A stretch of 64,000 bases of DNA from Malacoraja senta (lineage: Eukaryota): assembly GCA_038087875.1 (NCBI GenBank), contig JAXLNO010001347.1, forward strand, positions 62,001 through 126,000. Direction: 5' to 3'. Below the pieces are notes generated by a model that saw only the letters and a program-made list of their open reading frames with translations, was not told the DNA's origin and searched no databases. Both the position numbers and the translations under genes were made by a program. Shown in pieces: positions 4,451 through 62,515 of the stretch; the first letter of the stretch is position 1; each line of letters opens with the position of its first letter.

Positions 4451-4560
4451 AAAACATATCCCTGCCCTGTCCAATGAGAATATATAGAACATAGAACAGT
4501 ACAAGAACAGGACTTTCAGCCTGCAATATCCATGTGGAACAGGATACCAGGTTAAACTGA

Positions 4561-4848: not shown

Positions 4849-5421
4849 AACACTAATCTCCACTGCCTGCATGTGATCCATATCCTTGTATTCCCTGCAT
4901 ACCCACAAGCCTGTCCAAAACTTTCTTAAGCACCATTATCATGTCCTCCTCTACCACCACTCCTGGTAGCGCATTCTAGGTATCAAGCTCTCTCTGTGCA
5001 AAAAAACACTTGACCTGCACATCTCGTGTAAATTTTGCCCTTCGAAGCTTAACGCTGTGCTCTTTTGAGATGTGTGATAGACATGCAATCCCATTAGGGG
5101 CTGTCAACTGTGGTCAAGAAAATCCATGGTTAACTAATATGAAAGACATCAATTACACTTTCTCCCTGTCAAACAGGGATGTAATGCTGAGGTTCTATAA
5201 GGCGCCGGTCAAGCCACATTTGGAGCATTGTGAGCAATTTTGGGCACCATATCTGAGGAAGGATGTGCTGGCTCTGGAGAGGGTCCAGCGGAGGTGTACA
5301 AGAATGATCCCAGGAATGAATGGGTTAACATATGATGACCATTTGATGGTAGTGGGCCTGTACTCGCTGGAGTTTAGAAGAATAAGGGGGGACCTCATTG
5401 AATCATACAAAATAGTAAAAG

Positions 5422-14880: not shown

Positions 14881-15173
14881 TGATCCAAACCCAGGTCCGG
14901 ACCACTGAAACAGCCGCGGCTGTCGACTCTCACCACCTCCCCGGGCGAGGCCACCGCAACCACTGTCGCCGACCTTCACTGTCTTCAGAAAGCCACCGAT
15001 GCTGCTGCCCATATCTCTACTCCAGCTCCCCACGGGCCTCCACCAGCAACTCTGCCAACCCTCGTCTCTCCAGCGGCCACCAGCGGGCCAGAGCCGTCAC
15101 CTCACCAGAGTTCCCGGCATAGCACCAGGCCCACAACCTAAACCATGCAGACAGCACATGGTCTGATTGCTGG

Positions 15174-15592
15174 CTCCTAGTGCTCCCCCCCCCCCTCCTA
15201 CAGGGAAGACCCATCAGTAGTGATGACTCTGCTGGGTCCTAGTGCTCTCCCTCCTCCTACAGGGAAGATCCATCAGTAGTGATGACTCTGCTGGGTCCTA
15301 GTGCTCTCCCTCCTCCTACAGGGAAGATCCATCAGTAGTGATGACTCTGTTGGGTCCTAGTGCTCTCCCTCCTCCTACAGGGAAGATCCATCAATAGTGA
15401 TGACTCTGTTGGGTCCTAGTGCTCTCCCCCCTCCTTGTCCTACAGGGAAGATCCATCAGTAGTGATGACTCTGTTGGGTCCTCATGCTCTCCCTCCTCCT
15501 ACAGGGAAGACCCATCAGTAGTGATGACTCTGTTGGGTCCTAATGCTGCACCCCCCCCCCCTCCTGCAGGGAAGATCCATCAGTAGTGATGG
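15174..15592. repeat. 59-bp minisatellite, about 7 copies
   Basis: Unit CCTAGTGCTCTCCCTCCTCCTACAGGGAAGATCCATCAGTAGTGATGACTCTG(C/T)TGGGT; period 59 confirmed (15241 vs 15300). Confidence 0.92.
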
Positions 15593-15995
15593 TTCTTCCC
15601 CTTCCCCCTCTTTTAATCAGGTTACTCCGACCACACACTCGCCAGTTAAAATTCCCTGCTTTATTATGGATCACAATTTCTACGAATTACGATATATAAA
15701 ACTCTGTCGGCTCACACAAAATGTGAATGCTAGTCTTCACAAAATATATGCAAACATTTTCTGAGATTTCAGGAAATTCCCGTCCCCCCTCCTTCAGCTC
15801 CCGGGTACGATGTACCCCCTGCACCCCCCTCTCATGGGCCCTGTTTATACGTACGCGCATTCGTGAACAAAATACTGTGTGTGGTATGTGCCTTTGTTAG
15901 GTTCCTAAAAATAGGCTCAACAAATTGATGTTCTTTTCAACCCATTCATGACCCCCCAGAAAAACCACAAACGACCCCCAGGTTAAGAACCACTG

Positions 15996-32122: not shown

Positions 32123-33146
32123 CATTCCTCCGTCTACGCCGCATCTGCTCCCAGGATGAGGCGTTCCACTTCAGGGAACGGGGGTTCCCCTCCTCCACCA
32201 TAGATGAGGCTCGCACCAGGGTCTCTGCCATACCCCGCAACACTGCTCTCTCTCCCCATCCCCCCACTCACAACAAGGGCAGAGTCCCCCTAGTCCTCAC
32301 CTTTCACCCCACCAGCCGTCACATACAACAAGTGATCCTCCGTCAGTTTCGCCACCTCCAACGTGACCCCACCACTCGCCACATCTTCCCATCTCCCCCC
32401 ATGTCTGCCTTCCGCAAAGACCGCTCCCTCCGTAACTCCCTTGTCAATTCTTCCCTTCCCTCCCGTACCACCCCCTCCCCGGGTACTTTCCCTTGCAACC
32501 GCAAGAGATGCAACACTTGTCCCTTCACCTCCCCCCTCGACTCCATCCAAGGACCCAAGCAGTCGTTCCAGGTGCGACAGAGGTTCACCTGCATCTCCTC
32601 CAACCTCATCTATTGCATCCGCTGCTCTAGATGCCAGCTGATCTACATCGGTGAGACCAAGCGGAGGCTTGGCGATCGTTTCGCCGAACACCTCCGGTCG
32701 GTCCGCAATAACCAACTTGACCTCCCGGTGGCTCAGCACTTCAACTCCCCCTCCCATTCCGTATATGACCTCTCTGTCCTGGGTCTCCTCCATGGCCACA
32801 GCGAGCAACACCGTAAATTGGAGGAAATGCACCTCATATTCCGCTTGGGTAGTCTACATCCTGGTGGCTTGAACATTGAATTCTCCCAACTCTGCTAGCC
32901 CTTGCTGTCCCCTCCCCTTCATCAGCCCTCTGGTTGTCTCCTCCCCTCCCCCAGCCCTCGGGCTCCTCCTCCGCCTTTTTTCCCTTTTTCCTTTCTTCTC
33001 CCCACCCCCTTTCAGTCTGAAGAAGGGTTTTGGCCCGAAACGTTGCCTATTTCCTTCGCTCCACAGATGCTGCTGCACCCGCTGAGTTTCTCCAGCATTT
33101 TTGTGTACCTTCGATTTTCCAGCATCTGCAGTTCCTTCTTTAACAC
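32123..33146 (+). mobile_element. Young Penelope-like element, 5'-truncated, intact GIY-YIG ORF, 13-bp TSD
   Basis: ORF 32332-32898 (CNRKRCNTC, IYCIRC...IYIGETKRRLGDRFAEHL, QHFN). TSD AA(T/C)AGAGTGTAAA at 32110-32122 / 33147-33159. Confidence 0.93.
33017..33044 (+). ncRNA. Minimal type-I hammerhead ribozyme motif (Penelope terminus)
   Basis: CUGAAGA-A-GGGU(UUUG)GCCC-GAAAC-GUU; complete core. Confidence 0.65.
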
Positions 33147-33351
33147 AACAGAGTGTAAATAAAACCTGGCATCCTCTGTGCCATTTAAATTAATTATGAT
33201 TGATGTATATTTTTATTCCATGCAATCTTACAAAGTATTCCACAATACACCACTCGGCAGCATTCAGTGGATGGTGCCTGAGGCAAGGCAACTCTTTGAA
33301 CTAGTTCATGGATCACATGTGTATTCTTTTTACATTGTCTTTTACAATTTA

Positions 33352-36300
33352 TTATTATTTTTTTTTAATTTTTATTTATTAGAAGTACATTACATTACAA
33401 CCGCATACATTAGTACTCGTCATTTATATCTTCTTTCAATTAATGTACTCCATTTATTTTTTACACTAGAAAAGGAAAAGATTGAAAGAAAGAAGAAAGT
33501 GAAGGAAAAAGTGAAAGTGTAGGAAATGTGACAACAAAAAAGGACAAAGACCCTATAAGAGCAAAATTAAAAACAAAAGAAAAAGAGTTAAGAAATAGGC
33601 CCTAGAAAAGAAAGAGAAAGAGAAAGAGGAAAAAGAGAGAAACAAATATTTTTTTGAGCATTACGTAAATGGGACATACCAACTCTTCAACTATCATCCC
33701 CCCTTACCTGACCTGAATTTTTTTTAAAGTACTTTTGCACCCTATATTTGTAATAATTCTATAAATGCAGACCACGTCAGGTGGAAGTGATCTGGTTTAC
33801 CTGCTAGGAGGAGTCTTATCTCTTCTAGGTGTAATGTTTCAAACATATTTGAAATCCACATATTTATAGTTGGTATTGGAGCCTTCTTCCAAAATTTTAG
33901 AATTAGCTTTTTTTCAGTTATTAACCCATAGTCCATTAGTTTCTTTTGAAACACATTTAGTTCTGGACCATCTTCCGTTATTCCGAAGATAATCCATTCT
34001 GCTTTGGGTATCAGTCTTGTTTTAAATAACTTTGTAAAGATTTCAAAAATTTCATTCCAAAATTTTTTAAATTTTTGTACAGAAAACGAATGAGTGCGCT
34101 ATAGTAGCTTCTTGGGATTGACATTTATCACACATTTATCACAAACACAGATCAAAAAATATTAGCGAAAACATTAGCTAGAAGATTAAGTAAATACATT
34201 AGTAAATTAATAAACCCAGATCAGACAGGGTTTATTCCTAAGAGATACTCTTCTAATAATATGAGACGTCTACTCAACATAATGCACTCACACAAATCTG
34301 AAGATCAAGAATTATCAATTATTTCGCTGGATGCTGAAAAAGCATTTGATCAAGTAGAATGGAATTATATGGATAAAGTATTACAAAAATTTCAACTGGG
34401 AGAGAATTTTATTTTATGGATTAAGTTACTATATAACAAACCTACAGCTAGAATACTTACTAATAACATATTATCCTCGAAATTTCAACTATCAAGGGGA
34501 AATAGACAAGGATGCTCATTATCACCACAGCTGTTTGCTCTCATTATTGAACCGCTAGCAGAAAAAATTAGAATACACCCTGATATTCATGGATATAATA
34601 CTAAAGACTCGTATAATAAAATATCTTTATACGTGGATGATATATTATTGTATATTACAAAACCTCAAATCACTATACCAAATATATTAAATTTAATTGA
34701 AGACTTCGGATCTTTTTCTGGATATAGAATAAATTGGAATAAAAGTGAAATTATGACAATAAAACCGAAAGATTCAACACATCTTTTAAAATTCCCTTTT
34801 AAAATAGCTACAGAAAAATTTAAATATTTGGGAATCGAAATTACCAGAACATATCAAGGTATGTTCGGGGCAAATTTTGACCCCCTACTTAATAAACTGA
34901 ATACATTAATTAAATTCTGGAAAACGCTCCCGATGTCTTTAATAGGCCGAATAAACGCAATAAAAATGATCTTTTTACCACAAATTTTATACCTATTTCA
35001 ATCAATTCCTATATACTTACCTAAGAAGTTTTTTAAAAAACTCGACTCAGATATCACTAATTTTATATGGGACTATAAATCACATAGAATACAAAAAACC
35101 CATCTGAATAAACCTAAAGTATTGGGGGGTCTAGCACTACCTAATTTTATGTATTATTATTGGTCAGTAAATATTAAAAACATGGTTCAACTGATGGATA
35201 ACTCCGCCCAGCAAGTAGACTGGATTGTAATGGAAAAAGAGGATTGCTCCTCTAGAAACATTGGAGCGATCCTCCTCTCTCCAATGAAATTGAATAACAT
35301 AAACTATAATAAGAACCCAATTATTCATAGTACAATCCGTATTTGGAAACAAATAAAACAAAATTTAAAATTAAGAAACTTATCACTTTTATTACCTATA
35401 GTCAATAACCCTTCGTTTAGTCCTTCTATTATAGATAAAGCTTATACACAATGGGATAGACTAGGAATTAAAACGCTTGGTGACTTGTATGAAACTGGAA
35501 AATTACTTTCATTTCAACAATTACAAATAAAATATAAACTCGGAAATAATCAATATTTTAAATACTTTCAAATATGCGACTATTTGAAAAAATATACAAA
35601 AGATCATCATAATAACCCAGCAGATGTACTGGACGAGGCAATGCAGATAAAAGCGGAATCAGCAAACTTAATATCATATTTGTATAATATTATCTTAAAT
35701 GCACAAATACCATCTACGGAGGGTATCAGAAGAGACTGGGAACAAGAGTTAGCTATTAAAATTTCAAAGGAAAGTTGGAATGAATACTTATTAAACGTGC
35801 ATAAATGCTCGATTAATGTAAGACACACTTTAATACAATTTAAAATTTTACATAGATTATATTATTCGAAAACTAAAATTCATAAAATTTTCCCAAACGT
35901 ATCATCTATTTGTGATAAATGTCAATCCCAAGAAGCTACTATAGCGCACTCATTTGTCTTCTGTACAAAAATTCAACAATTTTGGAATGAAATTTTTGAA
36001 ATCTTTACAAAGTTATTTAAAACAAGACTGATACCCAAAGCAGAATGGATTATCTTCGGAATAACGGAAGATGATCCAGAACTAAATGTGTTTCAAAAGA
36101 AATTAATGGACTATGGGTTAATAACTGGAAAAAAGCTAATTCTAAAATTTTGGAAGAAGGCTCCAATACCAACTATAAATATGTGGATTTCAAATATGTT
36201 TGAAACATTACACCTGGAAGAGATAAGACTCCTCCTAGCAGGTAAACCAGATCACTTCCACCTGACGTGGTCTGCATTTATAGAATTATTACAAACATAG

Positions 36301-36833
36301 GGTGCAAAAGTACTTTAAAAAAAAATAAAAAATTGAGGTCAGGTAAGGGGGGATGATAGTTGAAGAGTTGGTATGTCCTATTTACGTGATGCTCAAAAAA
36401 AAAACATTTGTTTCTTTTTTTTTTTCTCTTTCTCTTTTCTTTTCTTAGGGCCTATTTCTTAACTCTTTTTCTTTTTGTTTTTAATTTCGCTCTTATAGGG
36501 TCTTCGTCCTCTTTTGTTGTTACATTTTCTACACTTTTCTACACTTGCACTTTTTCCTTCACTTTCTTCTTTCTTTCAATCTTTTCTTTTTCTAGTGTAA
36601 AAAAATAAATAAAGGGAGTACATTAATTGTAAGAAGATATAAATGACGAGTATTAATGTATGTGGTTGTAATGTAATGTACTTCTAATAAATAAAAATTT
36701 AAAAAAAAAAAAAAAAAAAAATAGATGATACATTAGGGAAAATTTTATGAATTTTAGTTTTTGAATAATATAATCTATGTAAAATTTTAAATTGTATTAA
36801 AGCGTGTCTTACATTAATCGAACATTTATGCAC
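33352..36833 (-). mobile_element. 5'-truncated L1 (33352-34143 and 36721-36833), split by a second L1 and flanked by a 163-bp direct repeat
   Basis: The two pieces are contiguous in the full-length L1 (…gacatttatcacaa|atagatgatac… near 53400). Flanks 33189-33351 = 36834-36996. Confidence 0.88.
34144..36720 (+). mobile_element. 5'-truncated young L1 (RT, C-terminus, 3'UTR, poly-A) nested in the opposite-strand L1
   Basis: ORF 34261-36300 nearly identical to the C-terminal part of ORF2 53012-56803, but YVDD instead of YADD; poly-A at about 36700-36720. Confidence 0.93.
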
Positions 36834-37129
36834 ATTAATTATGATTGATGTATATTTTTATTCCATGCAATCTTACAAAGTATTCCACAATACACCACTC
36901 GGCAGCATTCAGTGGATGGTGCCTGAGGCAAGGCAGCTCTTTGAACTAGTTCATGGATCACATGTGTATTCTTTTTACATTGTCTTTTACAATTTAGTTG
37001 ACCAATTAGTTTAAATATTTTTCCCCCAAGTTACTGAACTTTTTCCACAGGAAGTACTTTTTTATGGCCCATTCTAGTGAGAATATTGATGACTGAAAAA
37101 CAAGAAAACTGTTCTTCTGTACTCACTCT

Positions 37130-38040
37130 AAACTCATGACTGCGTAGCCAGACGTAGTCTGAACTCCATCATCAAGTTCGCCGACGACACCACTGTTGTG
37201 GGACGAAACACTGATGGTGATGAGTCAGAGTATATTAGTGAGATCGACCGATTGACCAAATGGTGCCAGCACAATAACCCGGCCCTCAACACCAGTAAAA
37301 CCAAGGAACTGATTGTGGACTTTGGAAGAGGTAGGATAGGAACCCACAATCCCGTTTATATCCTGGGACGATGGTGGAAAGGGTCAAGAACTTCAAATTC
37401 CTGGGCGTGCATATTTCCGAAGATCTTTCCAGGTCCCAACACACTGATGCAATCATAAAGAAGGCACAGCAGCGCCTCTACTTCCTGAGAAGATTACGGA
37501 GAGTTGGTATGTCAAGGAGGACTCTCTCGGACTTCTACAGGTGCACAGTAGAGAGCATGCTGACTGGTTGCATCGTGGCTGGGTTCGGCAACTTGAACGT
37601 CCAGGAGCGGAAAAGAATCCACAAAGTTTGTGACTACTGCCCAGTCCATCTTCGGCTCTGACCTCCCTTCCATCGAAGGGATCCATCGCAGTCGCTGCCT
37701 CAAAATGGCTGCCAACAGACCCGCACCATCCTGGCCACACACTCATCTCTCCGTTGCCATCAGGAAGAAGGTGCAGGAGCTTGAAATCTGGAACATCCAG
37801 GTTCAAGAACAGCTTCTTCCCCACAGCCATCAGGCTATTAAACACGACATCAAACAAACTCTGAACAATAACAGCCTATTGCACTTTAAATGTTTATTTA
37901 TTGTGTATATATATGGTCTATGGTATATAGACACCCTGAACTTTTATCTCTGTATTATGTTTACATATTCTGTTGTGCTGCAGCAAGCAAGAATTCATTG
38001 TCCTATCTGGGACACATGACAAAAGAACTCTCTTGACTTT
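37130..38040 (+). mobile_element. Rex1/Babar LINE, 5'-truncated, frameshifted
   Basis: IIKFADDTTVVG...LNTSKTKELIVDF, FKFLGVHISEDL...KKAQQRLYFLRRL, FYRCTVES. Confidence 0.9.
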
Positions 38041-48800: not shown

Positions 48801-50184
48801 ATAGCGATAGACACAAAATGCTGGAATAACTCAGTGGGACAGGCAGAATCTCTAGAGAAGGAATGGGTGATGTGTCAGATTGAGGCCCTTCTTCAGACTT
48901 TGTCATCATTGTGCTAGCTTGCTCCAATCCCATTCACCCATCATTTTTCTGATTGAAAAATATTCAGATTTCAAACTCTGATGATTGTATTTAAATATCT
49001 AAGACCAACAGCTCTTTCATTCAAAACATATCTTTCAATCATTTGTTCTTATATCTCTCTATATCACCGCCTGTATCTCTCGTTTCCCTTTCCCCTGACT
49101 ATCAGTCTGAAGAATGGTCTCGACCTGAAACGCTACCTATTCCTTTTCTCCAGAGTCGCTGTCCGACCCGCTGAGTTACTCCAGCATTTTGTGTCTATCT
49201 TCGGTTTAAACCAGCATCTGCAGTTCCTTCCTACGCAGCTCCTCCCTCGGCATGCATACAGTCCATACAATTTCACAGTTGAGGTTAGCGTTGTGTAGTG
49301 TTCAAGTGCGTGATAGTTGTTGGGAAGAAGCTATTCTTGAACCTGGTTGTCATGGTTTTCAAACACCTATACTTTCTTCCCCATGGTGGGAGGTAATGAA
49401 AGTGTGGCCAGGGGGATGATGTTGCCTTCCTTTTTGAGGCAGCGTCTTGTGTGGATCCCTTCAATGGTGGTGAGGTCAGAACCCACGATGAACCGGGCAG
49501 TATAACTTCCTGATTATTCACAAATTTAAGTATTTCATCTGAAGAGCAGGCCTAAGTCATAGAATTGCTCTCTAAATATCCCTTCCTTTAAGATGCACCT
49601 TAAATGTTTATTTTGCTAATTGTCATGTCATGCCATTATACTGCTCGAAGTAAAATGTTACAGAATAATACTCTTACGAATCTCATTGAAGCATTTTCCT
49701 AAATTGGAACTGCTATAAATGTTATTCTTTATATCTAAGCCTGTTTCCCCTTTCACCAAATTAGAATATTACCATCAAAGGAGAATGTCATTGTTTTGTT
49801 TGGCTCTGGAGATGCGTGTTGGAATGTGATCATTAAAATCTTCTTGTATATTGAACCCTGAACTACACTATACTCAGCTATGATTAATGAACAAAATAAA
49901 GACAAAGTGTTGGAGTAACTCAGCAGATCAGGCAGCATCGCTGGTGAGAATGGATAGGTAATGTGTCGAGTCGGACCCTGTAGACCTATGGACTGTCTTT
50001 GGTTAAACTAAGCATTTGCGGTGTATTTGCACATGTATTGGGATTATCAATTAACTGAATTTTTAGTATGTTATCTATTTGTATTGTCTTACAGGTCTGC
50101 TACATGAATGTCATTGTTTTGTAGTCAGCACATTGAACATTCTATACTATCTTTCCTTCTGGACTCTCTTGTGGAGTGGGATCA

Positions 50185-52099
50185 AACCTAACATAAGCAA
50201 AATGTTGCCATTCATCCTTTGTTCCCAATCTCTGATATTCTATAAGATCATAACCGATCCTCTAGCAGACCACCAATTTTCTGAATTCCGGATTCCTTTT
50301 GTATCCAAGCATATTCCTATCCCTGCCTCAAGCATCTGATTGACTTAAAGCCCACAGCCTACTTGGACAGAGAATTTGAAAGACTAATTAAAACTAATTT
50401 CATCTCATTACTGCACTGAATTCAATGATTCAATGATATTTTATTGTCACATGCACCTAGGCACAGTGAAATGCTTTGTTTCGCATACAATGGTAAAATC
50501 ATATAGCAGACCTAAACTAGACAATACACAAGTATCACCGTGTTTTGGTGCCATAAGAATGTCTGAACCCTTATTTTTAAACTGTGAATTTTGGTTCCAG
50601 ACACACCAGTCTGGGAGAAATAAAAAGATCATCCCTCATGTTCTGAACTTTGACTCACTTCATAAGTCAAAGGTGCAGAATTTGGTTGGTCGACCCATCG
50701 AGTTTACTCCACAATTTAATCATGGCTGACCTATCGTTCCCTCTCAGTGCCGTTCTCCTGTCATCTCCCTGTGACCTTTGACACTCTTACAAATCGGGCG
50801 GCATTTTCTGTTTTTGTATTCCAGTCCTCTTGATATAAATCACCTTCCTGACTACCGATTCAATTTGCAAATTAACCTTTTGAGAGTCCTGCACCAACAC
50901 TCCCATGTCACTGTGTGCCTCCGATTTCTGGATTCTCTCTCCATTTGTAAAATAATCTACGCCTTTATTCTTATTACCAAAATGCATGTCTCCACACTTT
51001 GCTATACTGGATTTCATCTGCCACTTCTCTGCCCACTCTCCTAACCTGTACACGTTCACATTACAGGAGTAGAATTAGGCCATTCGGCCCATCGAGTCTA
51101 CTCCACCATTCCATTATGGCTGATCTGTGCCTCCTAATCCCATTTTCCTGCCTTCTCCCCATGATAACCCATTCTAATCAAGAATTTGTCGATCTCTGCC
51201 TTAAAAATATCCACCAACTTGGACTCCACAGCCCTCTGTGGCAATGTGTTCCACAGATTAACTACCCTCTGACTAAAGAAATTCCTCCTCACCTCCTTTC
51301 TAAAAGAGCACCCTTTAATTCTGAGGCTATGACCTCTGGTCCTAGACTCACCCACCAGTGGAAACATCCTTTCCACATCCACTCTATCTTTGCCTTTCAT
51401 TATTCTGTCAGTTTCAATGAGGTTCCCCCCTCAACCTTCTTACCTCCAGCGAGTAGAGGCACAGTCCTGTCAAACTATCATCATATGCTAACCCACTCAT
51501 TCATGGAATTATTCTTGTAAACCTCCTCTGAACCAGAGCCAGCACATCCTTCCTCAGATAGGGGGCCCAAATTTCCACACTGTACTCCAAACGTGGCCTG
51601 ACCAGCGCTTTTGAAGCCTCAGAATGACATTTCTGTTTTTGTAATCCAGTCCTCTTGATATAAATCACCTTCCTGACTACCGATTCAATTTGCAAATTAA
51701 CCTTTTTGGGAGTCCTGCACCAGCACTCCCATGTCACTGTGTGCCTCCGATTTCTGGATTTACTCTCCATTTGTAAAATAATCTACGCCTTTATTCTTAT
51801 TACCAAATGCATGTCTCCACACTTTGCTACACTGGATTTCATCTGCCACTTCTCTGCCCACTCTCCTAACCCGAACAAGTCCTTCTGCAAAGTCCTTGCA
51901 TCCTCTACACTGCCTGCCCCTCCACCTATTTTAGCATCATCTGCAAACTTGGCCACAAAACTTTCAATCCCCTTCCAGTGGAAGTGGTGGAGGCAGGTTC
52001 GATGTTATCCTTTAAAAATAGATTGGATGGGTATATGGACGGGAAAGGAATGCAGGGTTATGGTCTGAGTACAGGTAGATGGGACTAGGGGGAAGTTAA

Positions 52100-52134
<35 letters not shown>

Positions 52135-52593
52135 TTCGGCACAGACTTGAAGGGCCGAGATGGCCTGTTTCCGTGCTGTTATGGTTATATGGTTATCCAA
52201 ATCACTACTAAACAACATAAACGTGACGACCGCACGTTTGGAGCTAAGAGTTGTCACTCAGTCAATAGCAAATTCCACAGTGTGTGCTAATCTTTTAGTG
52301 ATTTTGCATTGTACTACTGCCTCGCTCTCTTCCCACATTTCAGAATCAGATCAATCAGAATCAGAATCACACTTTATTCGCCAAGTATGTTTTGCAACAT
52401 ACGAGGAATTTGGCCATAAACTTGAACCTGTCAAACAATGCACTTTGTGTAAGAAAGAACTGCAGATGCTGGTTTAACTCAAAGGTAGACACAAAATGCT
52501 GGAGTAACTCAGCAGGCAGGCAGCATCTCTGGAGAGAAGGAATGGGTGACCTATCGGGTCGAGACCCTTCTTCAGACTGATGTCAGGGGAGTT
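50185..52593 (+). repeat. 2.4-kb direct repeat, copy A (left of the full-length L1)
   Basis: Matches 58877-61286 (offset 8692/8693; identical ORFs appear twice in the track); contains CR1 fragments and a Penelope terminus. Confidence 0.97.
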
Positions 52594-53011
52594 TTTTTTT
52601 TATTTATTTTTTTTTAATTTTTATTTATTAGAAGTACATTACATCACAGCCACATACATTAATACTCGTCATTTATATCTTCTTACAATTAATGTACTCC
52701 CTTTATTTATTTTTTTACACTAAAGAAAGAAAAGATTGAAAGAGAGAAGAAAGTGAAGGAAAAAGTGCAAGTGTAGAAAAGTGTAGAAAATGTAACAACA
52801 AAAAAGGACGAAGACCCTATGAGAGCGAAATTAAAAACAAAAAGAAAAAGAGTTAAGAAATAGGCCCTAAGAAAAGAAAAGAGAGAGAGAAAAAAAGAAA
52901 AACAAATGTTTTTTTTTTTGAGCATCACGTAAATAGGACATACCAACTCTTCAACTATCATCCCCCCTTACCCGACCTCAATTTTTTATTTTTTTAAAGT
53001 ACTTTTGCACC

Positions 53012-56000
53012 CTATGTTTGTAATAATTCTATAAATGCAGACCACGTCAGGTGGAAGTGATCTGGTTTACCTGCTAGGAGGAGTCTTATCTCTTCAAGGT
53101 GTAGTGTTTCAAACATATTTGAAATCCACATATTTATAGTTGGTATTGGAGCCTTCTTCCAAAATTTTAGAATTAGCTTTTTTCCAGTTATTAACCCATA
53201 ATCCATTAATTTCTTTTGAAACACATTTAGTTCTGGATCATCTTCCGTTATTCCGAAGATAATCCATTCTGCTTTGGGTATCAGTCTTGTTTTAAATAAC
53301 TTTGTAAAGATTTCAAAAATTTCATTCCAAAATTTTTGAATTTTTGTACAGAAGACAAATGAGTGCGCTATAGTTGCTTCTTGGGATTGACATTTATCAC
53401 AAATAGATGATACGTTTGGGAAAATTTTATGAATTTTAGTTTTCGAATAATATAATCTATGTAAAATTTTAAATTGTATTAAAGTGTGTCTTACATTAAT
53501 CGAGCATTTATGTACTTTTAATAAGTATTCATTCCAACTTTCCTTTGAAATTTTAATAGCTAACTCTTGTTCCCAGTCTCTTCTGATACCCTCCGTAGAT
53601 GGTATTTGTACATTTAAGATAATATTGTACAAATATGATATTAAGTTTGCTGATTCCGCTTTTATCTGCATTGCCTCGTCCAGTACATCTGCTGGGTTAT
53701 TATGATGATCTTTTATATATTTTTTCAAATAGTCGCATATTTGAAAGTATTTAAAATATTGATTATTTCCGAGTTTATATTTTATTTGTAATTGTTGAAA
53801 TGAAAGTAATTTTCCAGTTTCATACAAGTCACCAAGCGTTTTAATTCCTAGTCTATCCCATTGTGTATAAGCTTTATCTATAATAGAAGGACTAAACGAA
53901 GGGTTATTGACTATAGGTAATAAAAGTGATAAGTTTCTTAATTTTAAGTTTTGTTTTATTTGTTTCCAAATACGAATTGTACTATGAATAATTGGGTTCT
54001 TATTATAGTTTATGTTATTCAATTTCATTGGAGAGAGAAGGATCGCTCCAATGTTTCTAGAGGAGCAATCCTCTTTCTCCATTACAATCCAGTCTACTTG
54101 CTGGGCGGAGTTATCCATCAGTTGAATCATGTTTTTAATATTTACTGACCAATAATAATACATAAAATTGGGTAGTGCTAGACCCCCCAATACTTTAGAT
54201 TTATTCAGATGGTTTTTTTGTATTCTATGTGATTTATAGTCCCATATAAAATTAGTGATATCTGAGTCGAGTTTTTTAAAAAACTTCTTAGGTAAGTATA
54301 TAGGAATTGATTGAAATAGGTATAAAATTTGTGGTAAAAAGATCATTTTTATTGCGTTTATTCGGCCTATTAAAGACATCGGAAGCATTTTCCAGAATTT
54401 AATTAATGTATTCAGTTTATTAAGTAGGGGGTCAAAATTTGCCCTGAGCATACCTTGATATGCTCTGGTAATTTCGATTCCCAAATATTTAAATTTTTCT
54501 GTAGCTATTTTAAAAGGGAATTTTAAAAGATGTGTTGAATCTTTCGGTTTTATTGACATAATTTCACTTTTATTCCAATTTATTCTATATCCAGAAAAAG
54601 ATCCGAAGTCTTCAATTAAATTTAATATATTTGGTATAGTGATTTGAGGTTTTGTAATATACAATAATATATCATCCGCGTATAAAGATATTTTATTATA
54701 TGAGTCTTTAGTATTATATCCATGAATATCAGGGTGTATTCTAATTTTTTCTGCTAGCGGTTCAATAATGAGAGCAAACAGCTGTGGTGATAATGAGCAT
54801 CCTTGTCTATTTCCCCTTGATAGTTGAAATTTCGAGGATAATATGTTATTAGTAAGTATTCTAGCTGTAGGTTTGTTATATAGTAACTTAATCCATAAAA
54901 TAAAATTCTCTCCCAGTTGAAATTTTTGTAATACTTTATCCATATAATTCCATTCTACTTGATCAAATGCTTTTTCAGCATCCAGCGAAATAATTGATAA
55001 TTCTTGATCTTCAGATTTGTGTGAGTGCATTATGTTGAGTAGACGTCTCATATTATTAGAAGAGTATCTCTTAGGGATAAACCCTGTCTGATCTGGGTTT
55101 ATTAATTTACTAATGTATTTACTTAATCTTCTGGCTAATGTTTTCGCTAATATTTTTTGATCTGTGTTTAACAATGCTATAGCTCTATATGAGCCAGGTT
55201 CTTCTAAATCCTTATTTTTCTTAGGTATTAATGTAATCGTTGATTCCGCTAATGTATCAGGTAGTATTCGTTTTTTAAAAGCGTATTGGTACATTTTTTG
55301 TAATCTTGGTATTATTTTATCATAAAAGTTTTTATAAAATTCATTAGTAAATCCATCAGGGCCTGGTGTTTTTCCATTTTTTAGTGAGTTTATTGTATCT
55401 TCTAATTCCTTAATTGAGATTTGTGCACCCAGTTCCTCTTGTTCCTTCAGCTCTAACTTTGGAAGATTACAGGTATCCAAGAACTTTGTGATATTATTGG
55501 AATCAATTATCGTTTTAGATGTATACAAATTCTCGTAAAATTGCGCAAATCTTTTATTAATATCCTTCGGTGTTGTTAATAATTCCCCTTTATCTGATTT
55601 GATCTTTGGTATAGTATGTTCCTTTTCTCGTTTTTTTAGCTGGCGAGCCAAAAGTTTATGCGGTTTATCCCCAAATTCAAAGTGCTCTTGTTTTGTAATT
55701 TGAAAAAGTCTTATAAGTTTGGCAGATAATAATTTATTTAATTTAAATTTTAAAATTATTATTTTATTATGTTTATCTATTGATGGATCTTTAGCATTAT
55801 CTATATCCATTTGTCTAATAAGTTCTTCTAACTGTCTTTGTTCATTCTTATTCTTTTTATTTTGAAAAGCTTGATATGAAATTATAATACCCCTAATGTA
55901 TGCTTTAAAAGATTCCCAAAGTAAAGTAGGCGATATATCTGAAGTATCATTTGTTTGAAAAAAGACCTCCATTTGTTCTTTTAAATATATACTCGCTTGT

Positions 56001-56803
56001 GGATCTTTTAAAATTTGAGAGTTAAATCTCCAGAATGAATTATTCTTAGACAATCCTTCCAGTTTTAAAAAGAAAGTTAGTGGAGAATGGTCTGAAATTG
56101 AATTTGTATGATATATTGCATTAGATGTTTGGGGGATTAATTTTGTATCCAGCAGAAAGTAGTCTATACGTGAGTATGTCTTATGTACCATTGAGTAAAA
56201 CGAATATTCCCTGCCAGTTGGATTCACAATTCTCCAAACATCTGCTATATTAGTGTTGTTTATGTAGGTATTGAGGAGTTCCCCAGTTTTCGATTTCATA
56301 TTCCCTCTCTGTTTTTGACTTGATTTATCTAAGTACGGGTCTAAAACACAGTTAAAGTCTCCGCCTATTATAACATTTTGATAGTTTGACTCTGCAATTA
56401 TATTGAAGATTTTATTGAAAAAGTGGGGGTTATCAAAGTTAGGGGCATATATATTTACCAAAGTAAGTGGAGTGTCATGGATTTCTCCATTAACTATTAG
56501 GTATCTCCCTTCTATATCTGTTATAATATTCTTTGCTTTAAATGGTATACCTTTTCTTATGATAATTGACGTGCCTCTAGATTTTGAAGTGAATGAAGAG
56601 TGGTATGTTTGACCTATCCATTTCGCCCTCAGCCTAACTTGGTCCTGAGGTTTTAGGTGTGTTTCTTGTAGGAAGGTAATGTCAGAATTATACATTTTTA
56701 GCTGAGCTAATATCTTACCCCTTTTGATAGGTTCATTAATACCTCTTATATTCCAACTACAAAATGAGACTCCTCCTAGGTTCTTTTGTGTGGTGTCATG
56801 CAT
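53012..56803 (-). CDS. L1 ORF2p (1263 aa): AP endonuclease, reverse transcriptase and CCHC domain
   Basis: SWNIRGIN, FLQETH, GGDFN, SRIDYF, SDHSP; GKTPGPDGF, DAEKAFD, RQGCSLSP, LYADD, FKYLG; CDKC..HSFVFC. No stops. Confidence 0.97.
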   Translation of the reverse strand: MHDTTQKNLGGVSFCSWNIRGINEPIKRGKILAQLKMYNSDITFLQETHLKPQDQVRLRAKWIGQTYHSSFTSKSRGTSIIIRKGIPFKAKNIITDIEGRYLIVNGEIHDTPLTLVNIYAPNFDNPHFFNKIFNIIAESNYQNVIIGGDFNCVLDPYLDKSSQKQRGNMKSKTGELLNTYINNTNIADVWRIVNPTGREYSFYSMVHKTYSRIDYFLLDTKLIPQTSNAIYHTNSISDHSPLTFFLKLEGLSKNNSFWRFNSQILKDPQASIYLKEQMEVFFQTNDTSDISPTLLWESFKAYIRGIIISYQAFQNKKNKNEQRQLEELIRQMDIDNAKDPSIDKHNKIIILKFKLNKLLSAKLIRLFQITKQEHFEFGDKPHKLLARQLKKREKEHTIPKIKSDKGELLTTPKDINKRFAQFYENLYTSKTIIDSNNITKFLDTCNLPKLELKEQEELGAQISIKELEDTINSLKNGKTPGPDGFTNEFYKNFYDKIIPRLQKMYQYAFKKRILPDTLAESTITLIPKKNKDLEEPGSYRAIALLNTDQKILAKTLARRLSKYISKLINPDQTGFIPKRYSSNNMRRLLNIMHSHKSEDQELSIISLDAEKAFDQVEWNYMDKVLQKFQLGENFILWIKLLYNKPTARILTNNILSSKFQLSRGNRQGCSLSPQLFALIIEPLAEKIRIHPDIHGYNTKDSYNKISLYADDILLYITKPQITIPNILNLIEDFGSFSGYRINWNKSEIMSIKPKDSTHLLKFPFKIATEKFKYLGIEITRAYQGMLRANFDPLLNKLNTLIKFWKMLPMSLIGRINAIKMIFLPQILYLFQSIPIYLPKKFFKKLDSDITNFIWDYKSHRIQKNHLNKSKVLGGLALPNFMYYYWSVNIKNMIQLMDNSAQQVDWIVMEKEDCSSRNIGAILLSPMKLNNINYNKNPIIHSTIRIWKQIKQNLKLRNLSLLLPIVNNPSFSPSIIDKAYTQWDRLGIKTLGDLYETGKLLSFQQLQIKYKLGNNQYFKYFQICDYLKKYIKDHHNNPADVLDEAMQIKAESANLISYLYNIILNVQIPSTEGIRRDWEQELAIKISKESWNEYLLKVHKCSINVRHTLIQFKILHRLYYSKTKIHKIFPNVSSICDKCQSQEATIAHSFVFCTKIQKFWNEIFEIFTKLFKTRLIPKAEWIIFGITEDDPELNVFQKKLMDYGLITGKKLILKFWKKAPIPTINMWISNMFETLHLEEIRLLLAGKPDHFHLTWSAFIELLQT

Positions 56804-57611
56804 TTTGAATAATTATAGTACCTTTGAATCTTGTGGTGCGTCCATATCCCAGGTCTTTAGGTATTGGGGGAGTTTTTGAATTATTAACTTTTGTTGGTAT
56901 GTCCATATTATTCTTATCACTAAACACAAAACACAAACAAGTGATTTTATGTAATAAAAAAAAAACTAAAAAAGTGAGGCTACAGTGTCTATAGTCGGCA
57001 CTGTAGCAAGTGACCCACCTGTAGGTGGGAAAAAACCTTATTTTGACTTCCATTGCGTTGTTGCTCAACTCGCTCCGCTCTCTTAGTTAATCATAACATA
57101 TTAAAATATTAAAACGAGGCCTCACATTCATATATATAATACAATTTTACCCTGATATTTCCTTATAACATATATATATATATCAGAGTTTAATTATTAA
57201 ACCAATATTTTTGATTTCAATAAGAATCAGCTGTTGGTTGAAGGGGTTAACGAGACGTGCTCCTGGACATAAGCCAGGAGCTCGTTTCTCATCCCCTCCT
57301 CCCGCTTATAGACAAGGTTACAATTTATTAAAAATTCATATTAGTATGTTAGTTCATTATTTTTTTGTTTTTTTTTGTTAGTATTCTAATCTAACCTGCA
57401 TAACTTTTAAAGTTGTTAATAGGATAAGTTCTTACAATTGGTTATAACATTTTAATCAATAAGCAATTATTTTCTAATTCATATCCCGTTATAAAGTTGT
57501 TTACACGTTTTGAACAGAAAATGTCCTTGCTTCAACATTCCGGAGATAACAGTGTAACTATCCCCAGACAAAACATAGCTGAGAATTATTCGGATCTGCC
57601 AAAGCTCCCTT

Positions 57612-58682
57612 TTATTTCTGTCTTTCAACAATCGTTTGGGCATATTTGAAAGCGTCTTCAGGCTTAACAAATGACTTTTCAAGACCATTAAAAGAAATAC
57701 GCATTTTAGCGGGATAAAAAACCCCGAATCTGACCCCTTCTCTCCCTCTTAAAAGATCTTTAACCTTATCAAATTTATTTCTTTTTTGCACAATTTCATG
57801 TGGGTAGTCCCTGAATATCTTAATAGTGTCTTTGTCCAGCCGTAATTGTACACCATATTTGATTTTGGTCATAACATATTCCAGTTCTGCAGTGTCTCGA
57901 AATTTCACTATAATATGTCGTGGATAAGCTTTTCCCGCATCAAATCTTTTTCCAAATCTTGGGACACGATGAGCCACTTCGATTTTCGGTTCCTTGGGAA
58001 GATTCAACAGTTGTTTCAACAAGCCCATGGCAAATTCACGTACCTGTTCCCCTTCTGCCCCCTCTGAAACACCAAGAATCCTCAGATTCTGGCGTCTAGA
58101 ACGAGCTTCCAGGTCCAGGCATTTGAATGAGACTTTCTCTAATTGAGTCCCCATTTGTAGTGATGCTTGTTCGTTTTCTCGCCTCATTTGCTCATGTTCT
58201 TGCCTCAATTTCGCCATGTCTTCAACCAGTCGTGCCGTATTTTTCTCCAATTCCGTAATTGTCTGCATACTTGCAGCTACTGTTTCAAGTACAGCCGTGA
58301 ACTTATCCGTAGTAATTACATCCATCTTATCCATTTTCTCTGATAGTCCATCTTTCACCTCATCAATTCGTTTATTCATAGTGTCCAGTAAATCCGTCAT
58401 ATTCTTCTGGTTACCAGCATTTAAATCCTTCATCATCTTCTGCATTCCTTCCATCATTTTTGCCGAATTTTCCTTCATTTCCTTCTTATCTTCCACCCTA
58501 TTATCCGAGATCTCATCTTTCAAATTTTTCATTGATTTTTTCAAGTCATCAAAGTCTTTCTTAGATCTTGTATCCATTTCTGCAGCCACTTCAGAGACTT
58601 CAGAGGTAACTTCAGTTTCGAACTGTTTCGACAGTTTATTCACAGCTCTCTGAGGGCTCACAGCTGGAGTCAATTTACTCAT
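57612..58682 (-). CDS. L1 ORF1p (356 aa): coiled coil, RRM and CTD
   Basis: Heptad-rich N-half, DLEARSRRQNLRILGVSEG, IEVAHRV, PRHIIVKF, IFRDYP, GVFYPAKMRI. Confidence 0.93.
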   Translation of the reverse strand: MSKLTPAVSPQRAVNKLSKQFETEVTSEVSEVAAEMDTRSKKDFDDLKKSMKNLKDEISDNRVEDKKEMKENSAKMMEGMQKMMKDLNAGNQKNMTDLLDTMNKRIDEVKDGLSEKMDKMDVITTDKFTAVLETVAASMQTITELEKNTARLVEDMAKLRQEHEQMRRENEQASLQMGTQLEKVSFKCLDLEARSRRQNLRILGVSEGAEGEQVREFAMGLLKQLLNLPKEPKIEVAHRVPRFGKRFDAGKAYPRHIIVKFRDTAELEYVMTKIKYGVQLRLDKDTIKIFRDYPHEIVQKRNKFDKVKDLLRGREGVRFGVFYPAKMRISFNGLEKSFVKPEDAFKYAQTIVERQK

Positions 58683-58876
58683 TTAAAGGGCTTCAAACCA
58701 CCGTTTAAAACATCGCGTTTAACGATGACGTCATCAGCGCGGTAACCAGAAGCTCCGGTAAGGTTTTTAAAAACAATCCCGATTTTCGGACCCGTTTTAC
58801 ACGATAAATCGTGAAGTTTTTCGGGAGAGGAGCTGGGTGCACGTCTGTTAGTCTAACATGACGCCACCGGAAGTCT

Positions 58877-61286
58877 AACCTAACATAAGCAAAATGTTGC
58901 CATTCATCCTTTGTTCCCAATCTCTGATATTCTATAAGATCATAACCGATCCTCTAGCAGACCACCAATTTTCCGAATTCCGGATTCCTTTTGTATCCAA
59001 GCATATTCCTATCCCTGCCTCAAGCATCTGATTGACTTAAAGCCCACAGCCTACTTGGACAGAGAATTTGAAAGACTAATTAAAACTAATTTCATCTCAT
59101 TACTGCACTGAATTCAATGATTCAATGATATTTTATTGTCACATGCACCTAGGCACAGTGAAATGCTTTGTTTCGCATACAATGGTAAAATCATATAGCA
59201 GACCTAAACTAGACAATACACAAGTATCACCGTGTTTTGGTGCCATAAGAATGTCTGAACCCTTATTTTTAAACTGTGAATTTTGGTTCCAGACACACCA
59301 GTCTGGGAGAAATAAAAAGATCATCCCTCATGTTCTGAACTTTGACTCACTTCATAAGTCAAAGGTGCAGAATTTGGTTGGTCGACCCATCGAGTTTACT
59401 CCACAATTTAATCATGGCTGACCTATCGTTCCCTCTCAGTGCCGTTCTCCTGTCATCTCCCTGTGACCTTTGACACTCTTACAAATCGGGCGGCATTTTC
59501 TGTTTTTGTATTCCAGTCCTCTTGATATAAATCACCTTCCTGACTACCGATTCAATTTGCAAATTAACCTTTTGAGAGTCCTGCACCAACACTCCCATGT
59601 CACTGTGTGCCTCCGATTTCTGGATTCTCTCTCCATTTGTAAAATAATCTACGCCTTTATTCTTATTACCAAAATGCATGTCTCCACACTTTGCTATACT
59701 GGATTTCATCTGCCACTTCTCTGCCCACTCTCCTAACCTGTACACGTTCACATTACAGGAGTAGAATTAGGCCATTCGGCCCATCGAGTCTACTCCACCA
59801 TTCCATTATGGCTGATCTGTGCCTCCTAATCCCATTTTCCTGCCTTCTCCCCATGATAACCCATTCTAATCAAGAATTTGTCGATCTCTGCCTTAAAAAT
59901 ATCCACCAACTCGGACTCCACAGCCCTCTGTGGCAATGTGTTCCACAGATTAACTACCCTCTGACTAAAGAAATTCCTCCTCACCTCCTTTCTAAAAGAG
60001 CACCCTTTAATTCTGAGGCTATGACCTCTGGTCCTAGACTCACCCACCAGTGGAAACATCCTTTCCACATCCACTCTATCTTTGCCTTTCATTATTCTGT
60101 CAGTTTCAATGAGGTTCCCCCCTCAACCTTCTTACCTCCAGCGAGTAGAGGCACAGTCCTGTCAAACTATCATCATATGCTAACCCACTCATTCATGGAA
60201 TTATTCTTGTAAACCTCCTCTGAACCAGAGCCAGCACATCCTTCCTCAGATAGGGGGCCCAAATTTCCACACTGTACTCCAAACGTGGCCTGACCAGCGC
60301 TTTTGAAGCCTCAGAATGACATTTCTGTTTTTGTAATCCAGTCCTCTTGATATAAATCACCTTCCTGACTACCGATTCAATTTGCAAATTAACCTTTTTG
60401 GGAGTCCTGCACCAGCACTCCCATGTCACTGTGTGCCTCCGATTTCTGGATTTACTCTCCATTTGTAAAATAATCTACGCCTTTATTCTTATTACCAAAT
60501 GCATGTCTCCACACTTTGCTACACTGGATTTCATCTGCCACTTCTCTGCCCACTCTCCTAACCCGAACAAGTCCTTCTGCAAAGTCCTTGCATCCTCTAC
60601 ACTGCCTGCCCCTCCACCTATTTTAGCATCATCTGCAAACTTGGCCACAAAACATTCAATCCCCTTCCAGTGGAAGTGGTGGAGGCAGGTTCGATGTTAT
60701 CCTTTAAAAATAGATTGGATGGGTATATGGACGGGAAAGGAATGCAGGGTTATGGTCTGAGTACAGGTAGATGGGACTAGGGGGAAGTTAATAAATTTAA
60801 AAAATAAATAAAAAATTAAAAAAAGCATTCGGCACAGACTTGAAGGGCCGAGATGGCCTGTTTCCGTGCTGTTATGGTTATATGGTTATCCAAATCACTA
60901 CTAAACAACATAAACGTGACGACCGCACGTTTGGAGCTAAGAGTTGTCACTCAGTCAATAGCAAATTCCACAGTGTGTGCTAATCTTTTAGTGATTTTGC
61001 ATTGTACTACTGCCTCGCTCTCTTCCCACATTTCAGAATCAGATCAATCAGAATCAGAATCACACTTTATTCGCCAAGTATGTTTTGCAACATACGAGGA
61101 ATTTGGCCATAAACTTGAACCTGTCAAACAATGCACTTTGTGTAAGAAAGAACTGCAGATGCTGGTTTAACTCAAAGGTAGACACAAAATGCTGGAGTAA
61201 CTCAGCAGGCAGGCAGCATCTCTGGAGAGAAGGAATGGGTGACCTATCGGGTCGAGACCCTTCTTCAGACTGATGTCAGGGGAGTT
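58877..61286 (+). repeat. 2.4-kb direct repeat, copy A' (right of the full-length L1)
   Basis: Three substitutions seen versus copy A (50282/58974, 51220/59912, 51962/60654), plus a different A-tract. Confidence 0.97.
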
Positions 61287-62515
61287 GACGGGACAAAGAT
61301 AGAATGTAGTTGAAGACATTAAGACTGGTGGGAGAACTGGGATGGGGAGGGGATAGAGAGGGAATGCAAGGGCTATTTAAAGTTAGAGAAGTCAATGTTC
61401 ATACAGCTGGGGTGTAAACTACCCAAGTGAAATATGAGGTGCTATTCCTCCAATTTGCACTGGGCCTCACTCTGACAATGGAGGAGGCCCAGGACCGAAA
61501 GGTCAGATTGTGAATGGGAGGGGAAGTTGAAGTGCTGAGCAACCAGGAGATCAGGTAGGTTAAGATGGACAGAGCGGAGTAGTTCAGTGAAATGATTGCC
61601 GAGCCTGTGCTTGGCCTCGCTGATGTAGAGAAGTTGGCTCCTGCAACTGCAGATGCAGTAGATGAGGTTCGAGGAGGTGCAAGTGAACCTCTGCCTCACC
61701 TGGAAAGACTGCTTGGGTCCTTGGATGGAGTTGAGGGGAGAGGGAAAGGGACAGGTGTTGCATCTCCTGCGGTTGCAGGGAAAGTACCTGGGGAGGGGGT
61801 GGTTTGGGTGGAAAAGGACGAGTTGATGAGGGAATTTCCGAGGGAACGGTCTCCACGAAAAGCAGAAAGGGGAGGAGATGGGAAGATGTGGCCAGTAGTG
61901 GGATCCCGTTGGAGTTGGCAAAAATGATGGAGGATTATATGCTGTATGCGACGGCTGATGGGGTGGAAGGTGACGACAAGGGGGACTCTGTCCTTGGTAC
62001 GAATGGGGGGGGGGGGGGGGGGTAGGGAGAGTAAGAGCGGAGCATCGAGGAAACCCTAGTGAGTGCCTCATCTATAATGGAAGAAGGGAACCCCAGTTTC
62101 CTAAAGAATGAGGACATCTCCGATGCCCTGGAAAAGAAAACCTCATCCTGGGCGCAGATGCTGCGTAGACGGAGGAAGTGGTAGTCGGGATACAGTCTTT
62201 ACAGGAAGCAGGGTGGGAAGAAGTGTAGTCCAGATAGCTATGGGAGTCAGTAGGTTTGTAGTAGATGTCGGTCAATAGTATGTTTCCTGTTATGGAGATG
62301 GTGAGATCTAGAAACGGTAGGGAGATGTCCGAGATGGTCCAAGTGAATTGGAGTGCAGGATGGAAATTGGTGGTGAAGTTGATGAAGTCAGTGAGTTCTG
62401 CATGGGAGCAGGAAGTAGCATCAATGCAGTCGTCAATGTAGCGGAGATAGAGTTCGGGGATCGGGCCAGTGTACCTCTGGAACAGTGATTGTTCGATGTT
62501 CCCTACAAGGGCAGC
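61140..62515 (-). mobile_element. Penelope-like element (RT C-terminus, GIY-YIG, terminal repeat), frameshifted
   Basis: LYLRYIDDC...LPFLDL..YYKPTDSHSYL; CNRRRCNTC..QHFN. Its terminus is the point where the 2.4-kb duplication ends. Confidence 0.9.

What the first reader, a model, noticed from the sequence alone, without database searches (positions are those of the whole stretch)
33189..36996. Second insertion of the same L1 family has a 163-bp TSD-like duplication: possible family-level long-TSD mechanism
Seen: a minus-strand 5'-truncated L1 (33352-34143 plus 36721-36833) is flanked by 33189-33351 = 36834-36996 with one mismatch. The repeat begins at the poly-A junction (sense strand ACT|AAATT, endonuclease-like) and ends at the truncation point. 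In the same window, an older L1 family has a ~12-bp TSD and the Penelope copies have 13-14 bp. Inference: two of three assessable insertions of this L1 family having very long duplications suggests a property of this clade's endonuclease or second-strand step. Such a family would duplicate host sequence, including exon-sized pieces, as it moves. This is the best candidate for an undescribed mechanism in the window.
Basis: partly seen in the sequence, partly recalled or inferred. Interest (0 to 1): 0.75.

Follow-up and report, generated by a model that had tools for sequence, protein, structure and literature searches.

The report
Skate L1 with 163-bp target duplication
A short, dead copy of an L1 jumping gene in a skate genome sits exactly between two copies of a 163-base stretch of host DNA, so its insertion most likely duplicated its own landing site; this outcome is known from human cells, and whether this L1 family does it habitually could not be settled here.

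Summary
33189-33351 and 36834-36996 are a 163-nt direct repeat with one mismatch. It abuts the A-rich tail and the 5' truncation point of a minus-strand L1 ("A": 33352-34132 plus 36721-36833). A is split by a nested plus-strand L1 ("B": 34144-36720).

The first nick is a canonical TTT/A site. The 5' junction has 3 nt of microhomology, and the second break lies at a TT/AA-like site. The best reading is one target-primed insertion whose two strand breaks were about 160 bp apart.

I also confirmed that the full-length copy of the family ("F": 52592-58876) is flanked by a 2.4-kb duplication. These two are the only near-identical direct repeats within 12 kb of each other in the window.

The family-level inference is only partly supported:
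- Two of three is weak after a scan of 1201 windows.
- B has no TSD.
- No census or empty-site test was possible.

This scan has already noted at least 15 other L1 copies with 130 bp to 2.5 kb duplications on other DNA of this genome. Those notes are unchecked leads.

Long L1 TSDs, their dependence on host repair, and LINE families with habitual long TSDs are all published.

The parts
33189..33351 (.). TSD copy next to the A-rich tail of L1 A (downstream copy in L1 sense)
   Evidence: 163 nt, 99% to 36834-36996; sequence; mismatch at 33291
33352..33366 (-). A-rich 3' terminus of L1 A (reads AAAAAAAAATAATAA on the sense strand)
   Evidence: compared with the tails of F and B
33352..34132 (-). 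L1 A, 3' part (end of ORF2, 3' UTR, tail); 95.6% identical to F in aligned columns
34133..34143 (.). 11-nt tandem copy of 34122-34132 (CATTTATCACA) at the 5' junction of nested L1 B; templated filler, not a TSD
   Evidence: the full-length copy has this motif once
34144..36720 (+). L1 B, nested 5'-truncated copy (F positions 3709-6282), open ORF2 residues 546-1263, own A tail at 36700-36720, TSD 0-2 bp
36721..36833 (-). L1 A, 5' part (F positions 5362-5474), ending at the truncation point
36834..36996 (.). TSD copy next to the 5' truncation point of L1 A; its first 3 nt (ATT) also match L1 (microhomology)
52592..58876 (-). Full-length L1 F of the same family: ORF1 356 aa (57612-58682), ORF2 1263 aa (53012-56803)
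50185..52593 (.). 2.4-kb duplication, copy at the tail side of F
   Evidence: 99.6%, 8 mismatches, 1 gap
58877..61286 (.). 2.4-kb duplication, copy at the 5' end of F

Best explanation
L1 A is a 905-bp, 5'-truncated copy of a young skate L1 lineage. It inserted by target-primed reverse transcription with an unusually wide stagger between its two strand breaks.

Shown by the sequence:
- The + strand was nicked at ACAATTT/AGTTG, a TTT/A site, and the A-rich end of the RNA was copied from that 3' end.
- The other strand is broken 160-163 nt away, inside ...CATAATT(AAT)TTAAATGG.
- That end joins the L1 at position 5362 through 3 nt of microhomology.

Inferred:
- The roughly 160-nt stretch between the breaks was unwound and filled in on both sides, which gave the 163-bp duplication.
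- The second break was probably cut by the element's own endonuclease at a TT/AA site.

A second L1 (B) later landed antisense inside A, or already lay in A's source copy.

The insertion is young and comes from a sister subfamily of F and B. A carries 41 private differences, yet the TSD copies differ at only 1 of 163 positions.

On cause, I put about one third on a tendency specific to this L1 lineage. I put about two thirds on host repair or replication context, or on the ordinary long tail of L1 TSD lengths, which is simply well preserved and easy to see in this young lineage.
For: - The exact 163-nt repeat abuts both ends of A.
- A's two parts are contiguous in L1 coordinates, 5362-5474 and 5473-6277.
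- The first nick is TTT/A and the 5' junction has 3 nt of microhomology.
- The top strand has no TTAA or TTTA for 158 nt, and the break falls at the first such cluster. About 4% is expected for a random break (my estimate).
- These are the only two near-identical close direct repeats in 64 kb, and both flank this family.
- F has the same geometry, with 2.4 kb.
- If A's private differences had arisen after insertion, the TSD would be expected to carry 8-15 mismatches. It has 1.
- ORF2 is a bona fide L1 ORF2p.
- Published precedent: TSDs above 100 bp in up to 10% of HeLa events, and in 57-91% of events in NER-deficient cells (PMC5223499). 5'-truncated L1s are the class linked with extremely long TSDs (PMC2912911).
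Against:
- The link between the second nick and a TT/AA site rests on one locus, and F does not follow it: F has 13 TTAA sites inside its duplication and a non-canonical first nick.
- The one mismatch cannot date the event with any precision.
Confidence: 0.85

Rival explanations
1. Lineage-encoded habit. ORF2p of this skate L1 lineage places or delays the second-strand cut so that a large share of its insertions carry TSDs of 0.1-2.5 kb. That would make it a natural duplicator of exon-sized host DNA.
For: - Two of three copies in this window have TSDs of 163 bp and 2.4 kb.
- The two copies belong to two subfamilies about 4-5% apart.
- An older, unrelated L1 in the same window has a TSD of about 12 bp.
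- The second break of A lies at the first EN-like site on that strand.
- There are at least 15 unchecked notes of L1 copies with 130 bp to 2.5 kb duplications elsewhere in this genome.
- LINE families with such a habit exist: Dualen-4b_cRei and R9.
Against: - There is no denominator, so the share of insertions affected could be anywhere from about 0.5% to tens of percent.
- B has a TSD of 0-2 bp.
- Other notes describe ordinary insertions of full-length L1s in this genome.
- There is a look-elsewhere effect across 1201 windows.
- In human cells host NER status alone moves the share from 10% or less to 57-91%.
- F's nick sites differ from A's.
Confidence: 0.3
2. The 163-bp repeat is not a TSD. 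Either the host DNA was already tandemly duplicated before the insertion, or a later rearrangement (unequal exchange, repair synthesis) duplicated it.
For: No empty site could be examined.
Against: - Both repeat boundaries coincide with the L1 ends to within 1-3 nt.
- No spacer or extra host DNA lies between the repeat and the L1.
- The same geometry recurs at F.
- No other such repeats exist in the window.
Confidence: 0.05
3. Assembly artefact: a false duplication or a chimeric join around an inverted pair of near-identical L1 pieces.
For: A and B form inverted repeats up to 358 nt long at 98% identity, a structure that can confuse assemblers.
Against: - Both host-L1 junctions carry independent TPRT marks: the tail at a TTT/A site, and a microhomology join at the truncation point.
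- The two copies differ at one base.
- The junction sequences are unique and cannot arise from collapsing or expanding a repeat.
Confidence: 0.03
4. A and B are one event: twin priming or template switching on a single RNA.
For: Two pieces of the same family lie in opposite orientation next to each other.
Against: - B has its own 21-nt A tail.
- A and B overlap fully in L1 coordinates (5362-6285 against 3709-6282) and differ at 3.5-4.4% of aligned positions. They therefore come from different templates.
- A is contiguous once B is removed.
Confidence: 0.04

Closest known systems
Long TSDs of human L1 in cultured cells (Gilbert 2002/2005 and Symer 2002, as cited in PMC5223499 and PMC2912911)
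   Same: The element is an L1-clade ORF2p element that is 5'-truncated, has an EN-type first nick, and has a flanking duplication above 100 bp made by a distant second break.
   Different: This case is fixed, or at least present, in a germline assembly of a cartilaginous fish. The published cases are de novo events in transformed cells. The ORF2p here shares only the family-level alignment with human ORF2p.
L1 insertions in NER-deficient human cells (Servant et al., PMC5223499)
   Same: TSDs of 0.1 kb to more than 1 kb become the common outcome. The model there is that a distant nick is used for second-strand priming.
   Different: In that work the cause is a host repair defect. Here the host status is unknown, and an older L1 in the same region has a 12-bp TSD.
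Dualen-4b_cRei LINE of Chlamydomonas (bioRxiv 10.1101/2022.05.23.493040) and R9 LINE of rotifers (126-bp TSD, cited there)
   Same: Both are LINE families in which long TSDs are the rule. For Dualen-4b_cRei more than half of the insertions carry duplications above 50 bp, with a median of 900 bp and variable length.
   Different: These are different clades: Dualen has RLE plus APE endonucleases, and R9 is site-specific with a fixed length. For the skate L1 the habit is not demonstrated.
L1-mediated tandem duplications in tumours (PCAWG, PMC7058536)
   Same: An L1 insert sits between two copies of a duplicated segment, with an EN motif at the 3' junction.
   Different: Those are megabase-scale and somatic. 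The proposed route is through a second break on a sister chromatid.

Membership tests
L1-clade non-LTR retrotransposon | ORF2 with an APE-type endonuclease followed by a reverse transcriptase and a C-terminal Cys-rich part | tested here: met
   Exo_endo_phos 1.5e-16 and RVT_1 1.4e-39; zf-RVT is weak; end-to-end alignment with human L1 ORF2p 8sxt, E 6.7e-179, residues 12-1239.
L1-clade non-LTR retrotransposon | ORF1 of the L1 type (Transposase_22 / RRM-CTD) | tested here: inconclusive
   Transposase_22 scores 18.4 bits, below the 22.4 cut-off; a coiled-coil-like N-terminal part is present.
L1-clade non-LTR retrotransposon | A-rich 3' tail and frequent 5' truncation | tested here: met
   the tails of A, B and F; A and B are truncated at positions 5362 and 3709.
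TPRT insertion with a long TSD | The direct repeat abuts the tail and the 5' end with no spacer | tested here: met
TPRT insertion with a long TSD | Endonuclease-type first-strand nick (TTT/A) | tested here: met
   + strand ACAATTT/AGTTG.
TPRT insertion with a long TSD | An empty site that holds the duplicated stretch once | not testable with these tools
No skate genome is present in the searchable contig collections.
Twin-priming inversion | Two non-overlapping parts of one L1 RNA, with the inverted part lacking its own tail | tested here: not met
   A and B overlap fully, differ at about 4% of positions, and B has its own tail.
3' transduction | Flanking host sequence lies between the L1 end and a second poly-A tail | tested here: not met
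   no A tract follows 33189-33351 on the L1 sense strand.
LINE family with habitual long TSDs (Dualen-4b_cRei / R9 type) | Most insertions of the family carry long TSDs | tested here: inconclusive
   Two of three in this window. A census was impossible. Notes from other windows are unchecked.

The most novel reading that the evidence does not exclude
A young L1 lineage of skates, spanning at least two subfamilies, habitually makes target duplications of 0.1-2.5 kb in the germline. The likely reason would be that second-strand cleavage is delayed, or waits for an endonuclease-type site. It would then act as a natural, ongoing duplicator of exons and regulatory pieces in a vertebrate.
Probability: 0.3. 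Interest if true: 0.7.

Novelty: new member of a known kind. Interest (0 to 1): 0.42.

Why it matters
A 163-bp TSD on its own is a known, rare outcome of L1 insertion, and here it duplicated only non-coding, AT-rich DNA.

The value lies in the recurrence. Long L1 TSDs have been regarded mainly as a product of transformed or repair-deficient cells. A vertebrate germline in which they are common would give two things: a natural system to ask what sets the position of the second-strand break, the least understood step of TPRT; and a measurable route from retrotransposition to small segmental and exon duplications.

This locus adds one clean, small, fully resolved example, with both nick sites readable.

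Tried and rejected
- **Reads and contigs of related skates, to look for an empty site.** Only local scripts on the window file read them, for self-comparison and alignment to F.
- **Mini-census through other copies.** The exact ORF2 and ORF1 proteins are not on record. The word search found nothing closer than 54% identity, all on contigs of 4-7 kb without flanks. No skate genome is held in the contig collections.
- **The search of earlier findings by sequence.** This came back blank, which means nothing according to the operators.
- **Rule 'the second nick waits for the next TT/AA site'.** It fits A but fails for F.
- **Twin priming, 3' transduction, a pre-existing duplication and an assembly artefact.** All were rejected on junction anatomy (see the rival explanations).
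- **Coding or RNA content of the 163 bp.** No Rfam match and no convincing ORF.
- **Literature on elasmobranch L1 TSDs, and on RTE long TSDs that I recalled from memory.** Nothing was found in the library, so the RTE recollection is not used.

Full report
**Observation**

The repeat finder on 32500-37700 gives one direct-repeat family. It is 33189-33351 and 36834-36996, 163 nt at 99% identity. The single difference is 33291 A against 36936 G.

I aligned the full-length L1 of the window (F, 52592-58876, minus strand) to the whole window. The interval between the repeats holds three pieces:
- 33348-34135 matches F in the same orientation, so it is a minus-strand L1 whose tail lies at the left.
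- 34143-36721 matches F in the opposite orientation at 98.2%. This is a plus-strand L1.
- 36719-36836 is again minus strand.

Pairwise alignment places these pieces in L1 coordinates:
- 36721-36833 is at L1 positions 5362-5474.
- 33352-34132 is at 5473-6277.
- The plus-strand copy B is at 3709-6282.

**Junctions of A**

On the + strand the left repeat copy ends ...TTTTACAATTT(A). It is followed by TTATTATTTTTTTTT, the complement of A's A-rich terminus. The right repeat copy continues into host DNA as ...CAATTTA|GTTGACC.

The nicked strand therefore reads ACAATTT/AGTTG. This is the degenerate TTT/A motif of L1 endonuclease, the same motif quoted for tumour insertions in PMC7058536. One base is ambiguous.

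At the other end, the L1 sense strand reads ...CATCAATCATAATTAAT|GTGCATAAATG. F has AAT before GTACATAAATG, so 3 nt are shared between the target and the L1.

The second break thus lies somewhere within CATAATT/AAT/TTAAATGG. On that strand there is no TTAA or TTTA in the 158 nt after the first nick, and the break falls at the first cluster of such sites. With two TTAA sites in 193 nt and four possible break positions, I estimate about 4% for this by chance. That is suggestive, but it rests on one locus.

**Specificity within the window**

A plus-strand self-BLAST of all 64 kb was filtered for repeats of at least 25 bp and at least 96% identity lying no more than 12 kb apart. It returns exactly two hits: this 163-bp pair, and 50182-52593 = 58874-61286.

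The second pair is 2413 aligned columns at 99.63%, with 8 mismatches and 1 gap. It brackets F from its tail (52592) to its first base (58876). I therefore confirm the 'first' long duplication that the finding relies on. It agrees with the scan's earlier report s1-140434.

**What the element is**

F has two ORFs:
- ORF1 is 356 aa. Its Transposase_22 match is weak and below Pfam's cut-off.
- ORF2 is 1263 aa, with Exo_endo_phos, RVT_1 and a weak zf-RVT match. It aligns end to end with human L1 ORF2p (8sxt, E 6.7e-179).

F is an L1-clade element. In the 5.8-billion-protein collection the nearest ORF2 is only 54% identical, and teleost L1s are near 40%.

**Relations among the three copies**

B and F are 98.4% identical. 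A is 95-96% identical to both in aligned columns.

Over 892 shared columns the private differences are 41 for A, 7 for B and 15 for F. About half of A's lie in a low-complexity CT-rich stretch.

If A's private changes had accumulated after insertion, the two TSD copies should differ at about 8-15 sites. They differ at 1 (Poisson P between about 5e-6 and 3e-3). A is therefore a young insertion from a sister subfamily, not an old copy. The two long duplications in this window thus come from two subfamilies of one lineage.

**The nested copy B**

Read from F, the unbroken L1 has ...GACATTTATCACA|AATAGATGATAC.... In the window B lies between CACA and AATAG, so at most 2 nt are duplicated.

The 11 nt CATTTATCACA stand twice in tandem on the left of B's 5' end (34122-34132 and 34133-34143). 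Both copies are on the same side of B, so this is not a TSD. It looks like templated filler at an end-joined 5' junction. For comparison, 5' extra nucleotides occur in 14.6% of 5'-truncated human L1s (PMC2912911).

So one lineage in one window gives TSDs of 0-2 bp, 163 bp and 2.4 kb.

**Other readings**

- **Twin priming fails.** A and B overlap fully in L1 coordinates, differ at about 4% of positions, and B has its own 21-nt tail.
- **3' transduction fails.** No second A tract follows the 163 bp.
- **A pre-existing or later duplication** would have to end within 1-3 nt of both L1 ends, twice in one window.
- **An assembly error** cannot create two unique host-L1 junctions that each carry their own TPRT marks.

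The duplicated 163 bp are 66% A+T. They have no Rfam match and no convincing ORF, so nothing functional was copied here.

**The family-level claim**

*Within the window.* Two of three gives a 95% interval of 9-99% for the rate. P(at least 2 of 3) is 0.028 at a 10% rate and 0.007 at 5%. Across 1201 scanned windows with three copies each, that would give 34 or 9 such windows by chance. The window alone proves little.

*Outside the window.* I could not build a census:
- The exact ORF1 and ORF2 products are not on record.
- Close relatives are absent from the protein collection.
- No skate genome is in the contig collections.

From then on I kept those letters out of every database, reads, paper and findings search. 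Only local scripts on the window file touched them.

*The scan's own notes.* For other DNA of this same genome they list L1 copies flanked by duplications of 40, 130, 247, 285, 314, 378, 434, about 480, 498, 502, about 700, 784 and 871 bp, 1.2 kb (twice) and 2.48 kb.
- One follow-up reports that related skates have the DNA once, without the L1 (s1-140515).
- The same notes also describe ordinary full-length insertions (s1-140879, s1-141533).
- These are unchecked leads without a denominator, and some may be the same locus seen twice.
- They make recurrence in this genome likely, but they cannot separate an element property from a host property.

**What is already known**

- In HeLa cells, TSDs above 100 bp never exceeded 10% of recovered L1 events. 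In XPA-, XPC- and XPD-deficient cells they made up 57%, 91% and 79%, and 38% of those long TSDs were over 1 kb. The authors propose that a distant, unrelated nick or DNA end is used for second-strand priming (PMC5223499).
- Extremely long TSDs were linked with 5'-truncated insertions (PMC2912911).
- Tumour genomes show L1-bracketed tandem duplications (PMC7058536).
- Habitual long TSDs at the family level are described for the LINE Dualen-4b_cRei. More than half of its de novo insertions carry duplications above 50 bp, with a median of 900 bp. The same source cites 126 bp for rotifer R9 (bioRxiv 10.1101/2022.05.23.493040).
- I found no paper on TSD lengths of elasmobranch L1s.

**Verdict**

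The locus is a clean example of an L1 insertion with a 163-bp TSD, most likely made by a second-strand cut at an endonuclease-type site about 160 nt from the first.

That is a new member of a known kind. The proposal of a lineage-encoded habit remains open, at about 0.3. It can be tested with a simple census of the assembly, and it would be of real interest if true. A host-side or long-tail explanation is currently at least as likely.

Noticed in passing
window 34122-34143: The 5' junction of the nested L1 B carries an 11-nt tandem copy (CATTTATCACA twice) of the adjacent target, and the TSD is only 0-2 bp. This looks like templated filler from end joining.
   Followed up: partly
window 52585-52600 and 61280-61295: The full-length L1 F was primed at a non-canonical site (GGGGAG(TT)/GACGGG on the nicked strand). 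Its far break is at AGGTT/TGATC. Its 2.4-kb duplication contains 13 TTAA sites, so the 'next EN site' idea does not explain it.
   Followed up: partly
window 33189-33351 (L1 sense strand): The strand that received the second break has no TTAA or TTTA for 158 nt after the first nick. The break coincides with the first such cluster.
   Followed up: partly
window 5418-7419: An older L1 of another lineage (46-49% amino-acid identity to F) has a TSD of about 12 bp, AAATAGT(A/G)AAAG. It is split at 6183-7128 by another insert that starts with a (TAA)n run.
   Followed up: partly
window 53012-56803 (-): The intact ORF2 of this family has no relative above 54% identity among 5.8 billion public proteins. 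The lineage is essentially absent from public protein sets.
   Followed up: no
window 15126-15600: A minisatellite of units of about 59-65 bp (about 7 copies, 84-95% alike) contains C-rich runs and a conserved CTACAGGGAAGA(T/C)CCATCAGTAGTGATGACTCT core.
   Followed up: no
window 33718-34075 and 35967-36324: A and B form a 358-nt inverted repeat at 98% identity, 1.9 kb apart. This part of A is far closer to B than the rest of A is (about 95%), which hints at gene conversion between the two nested copies or a mosaic source.
   Followed up: no
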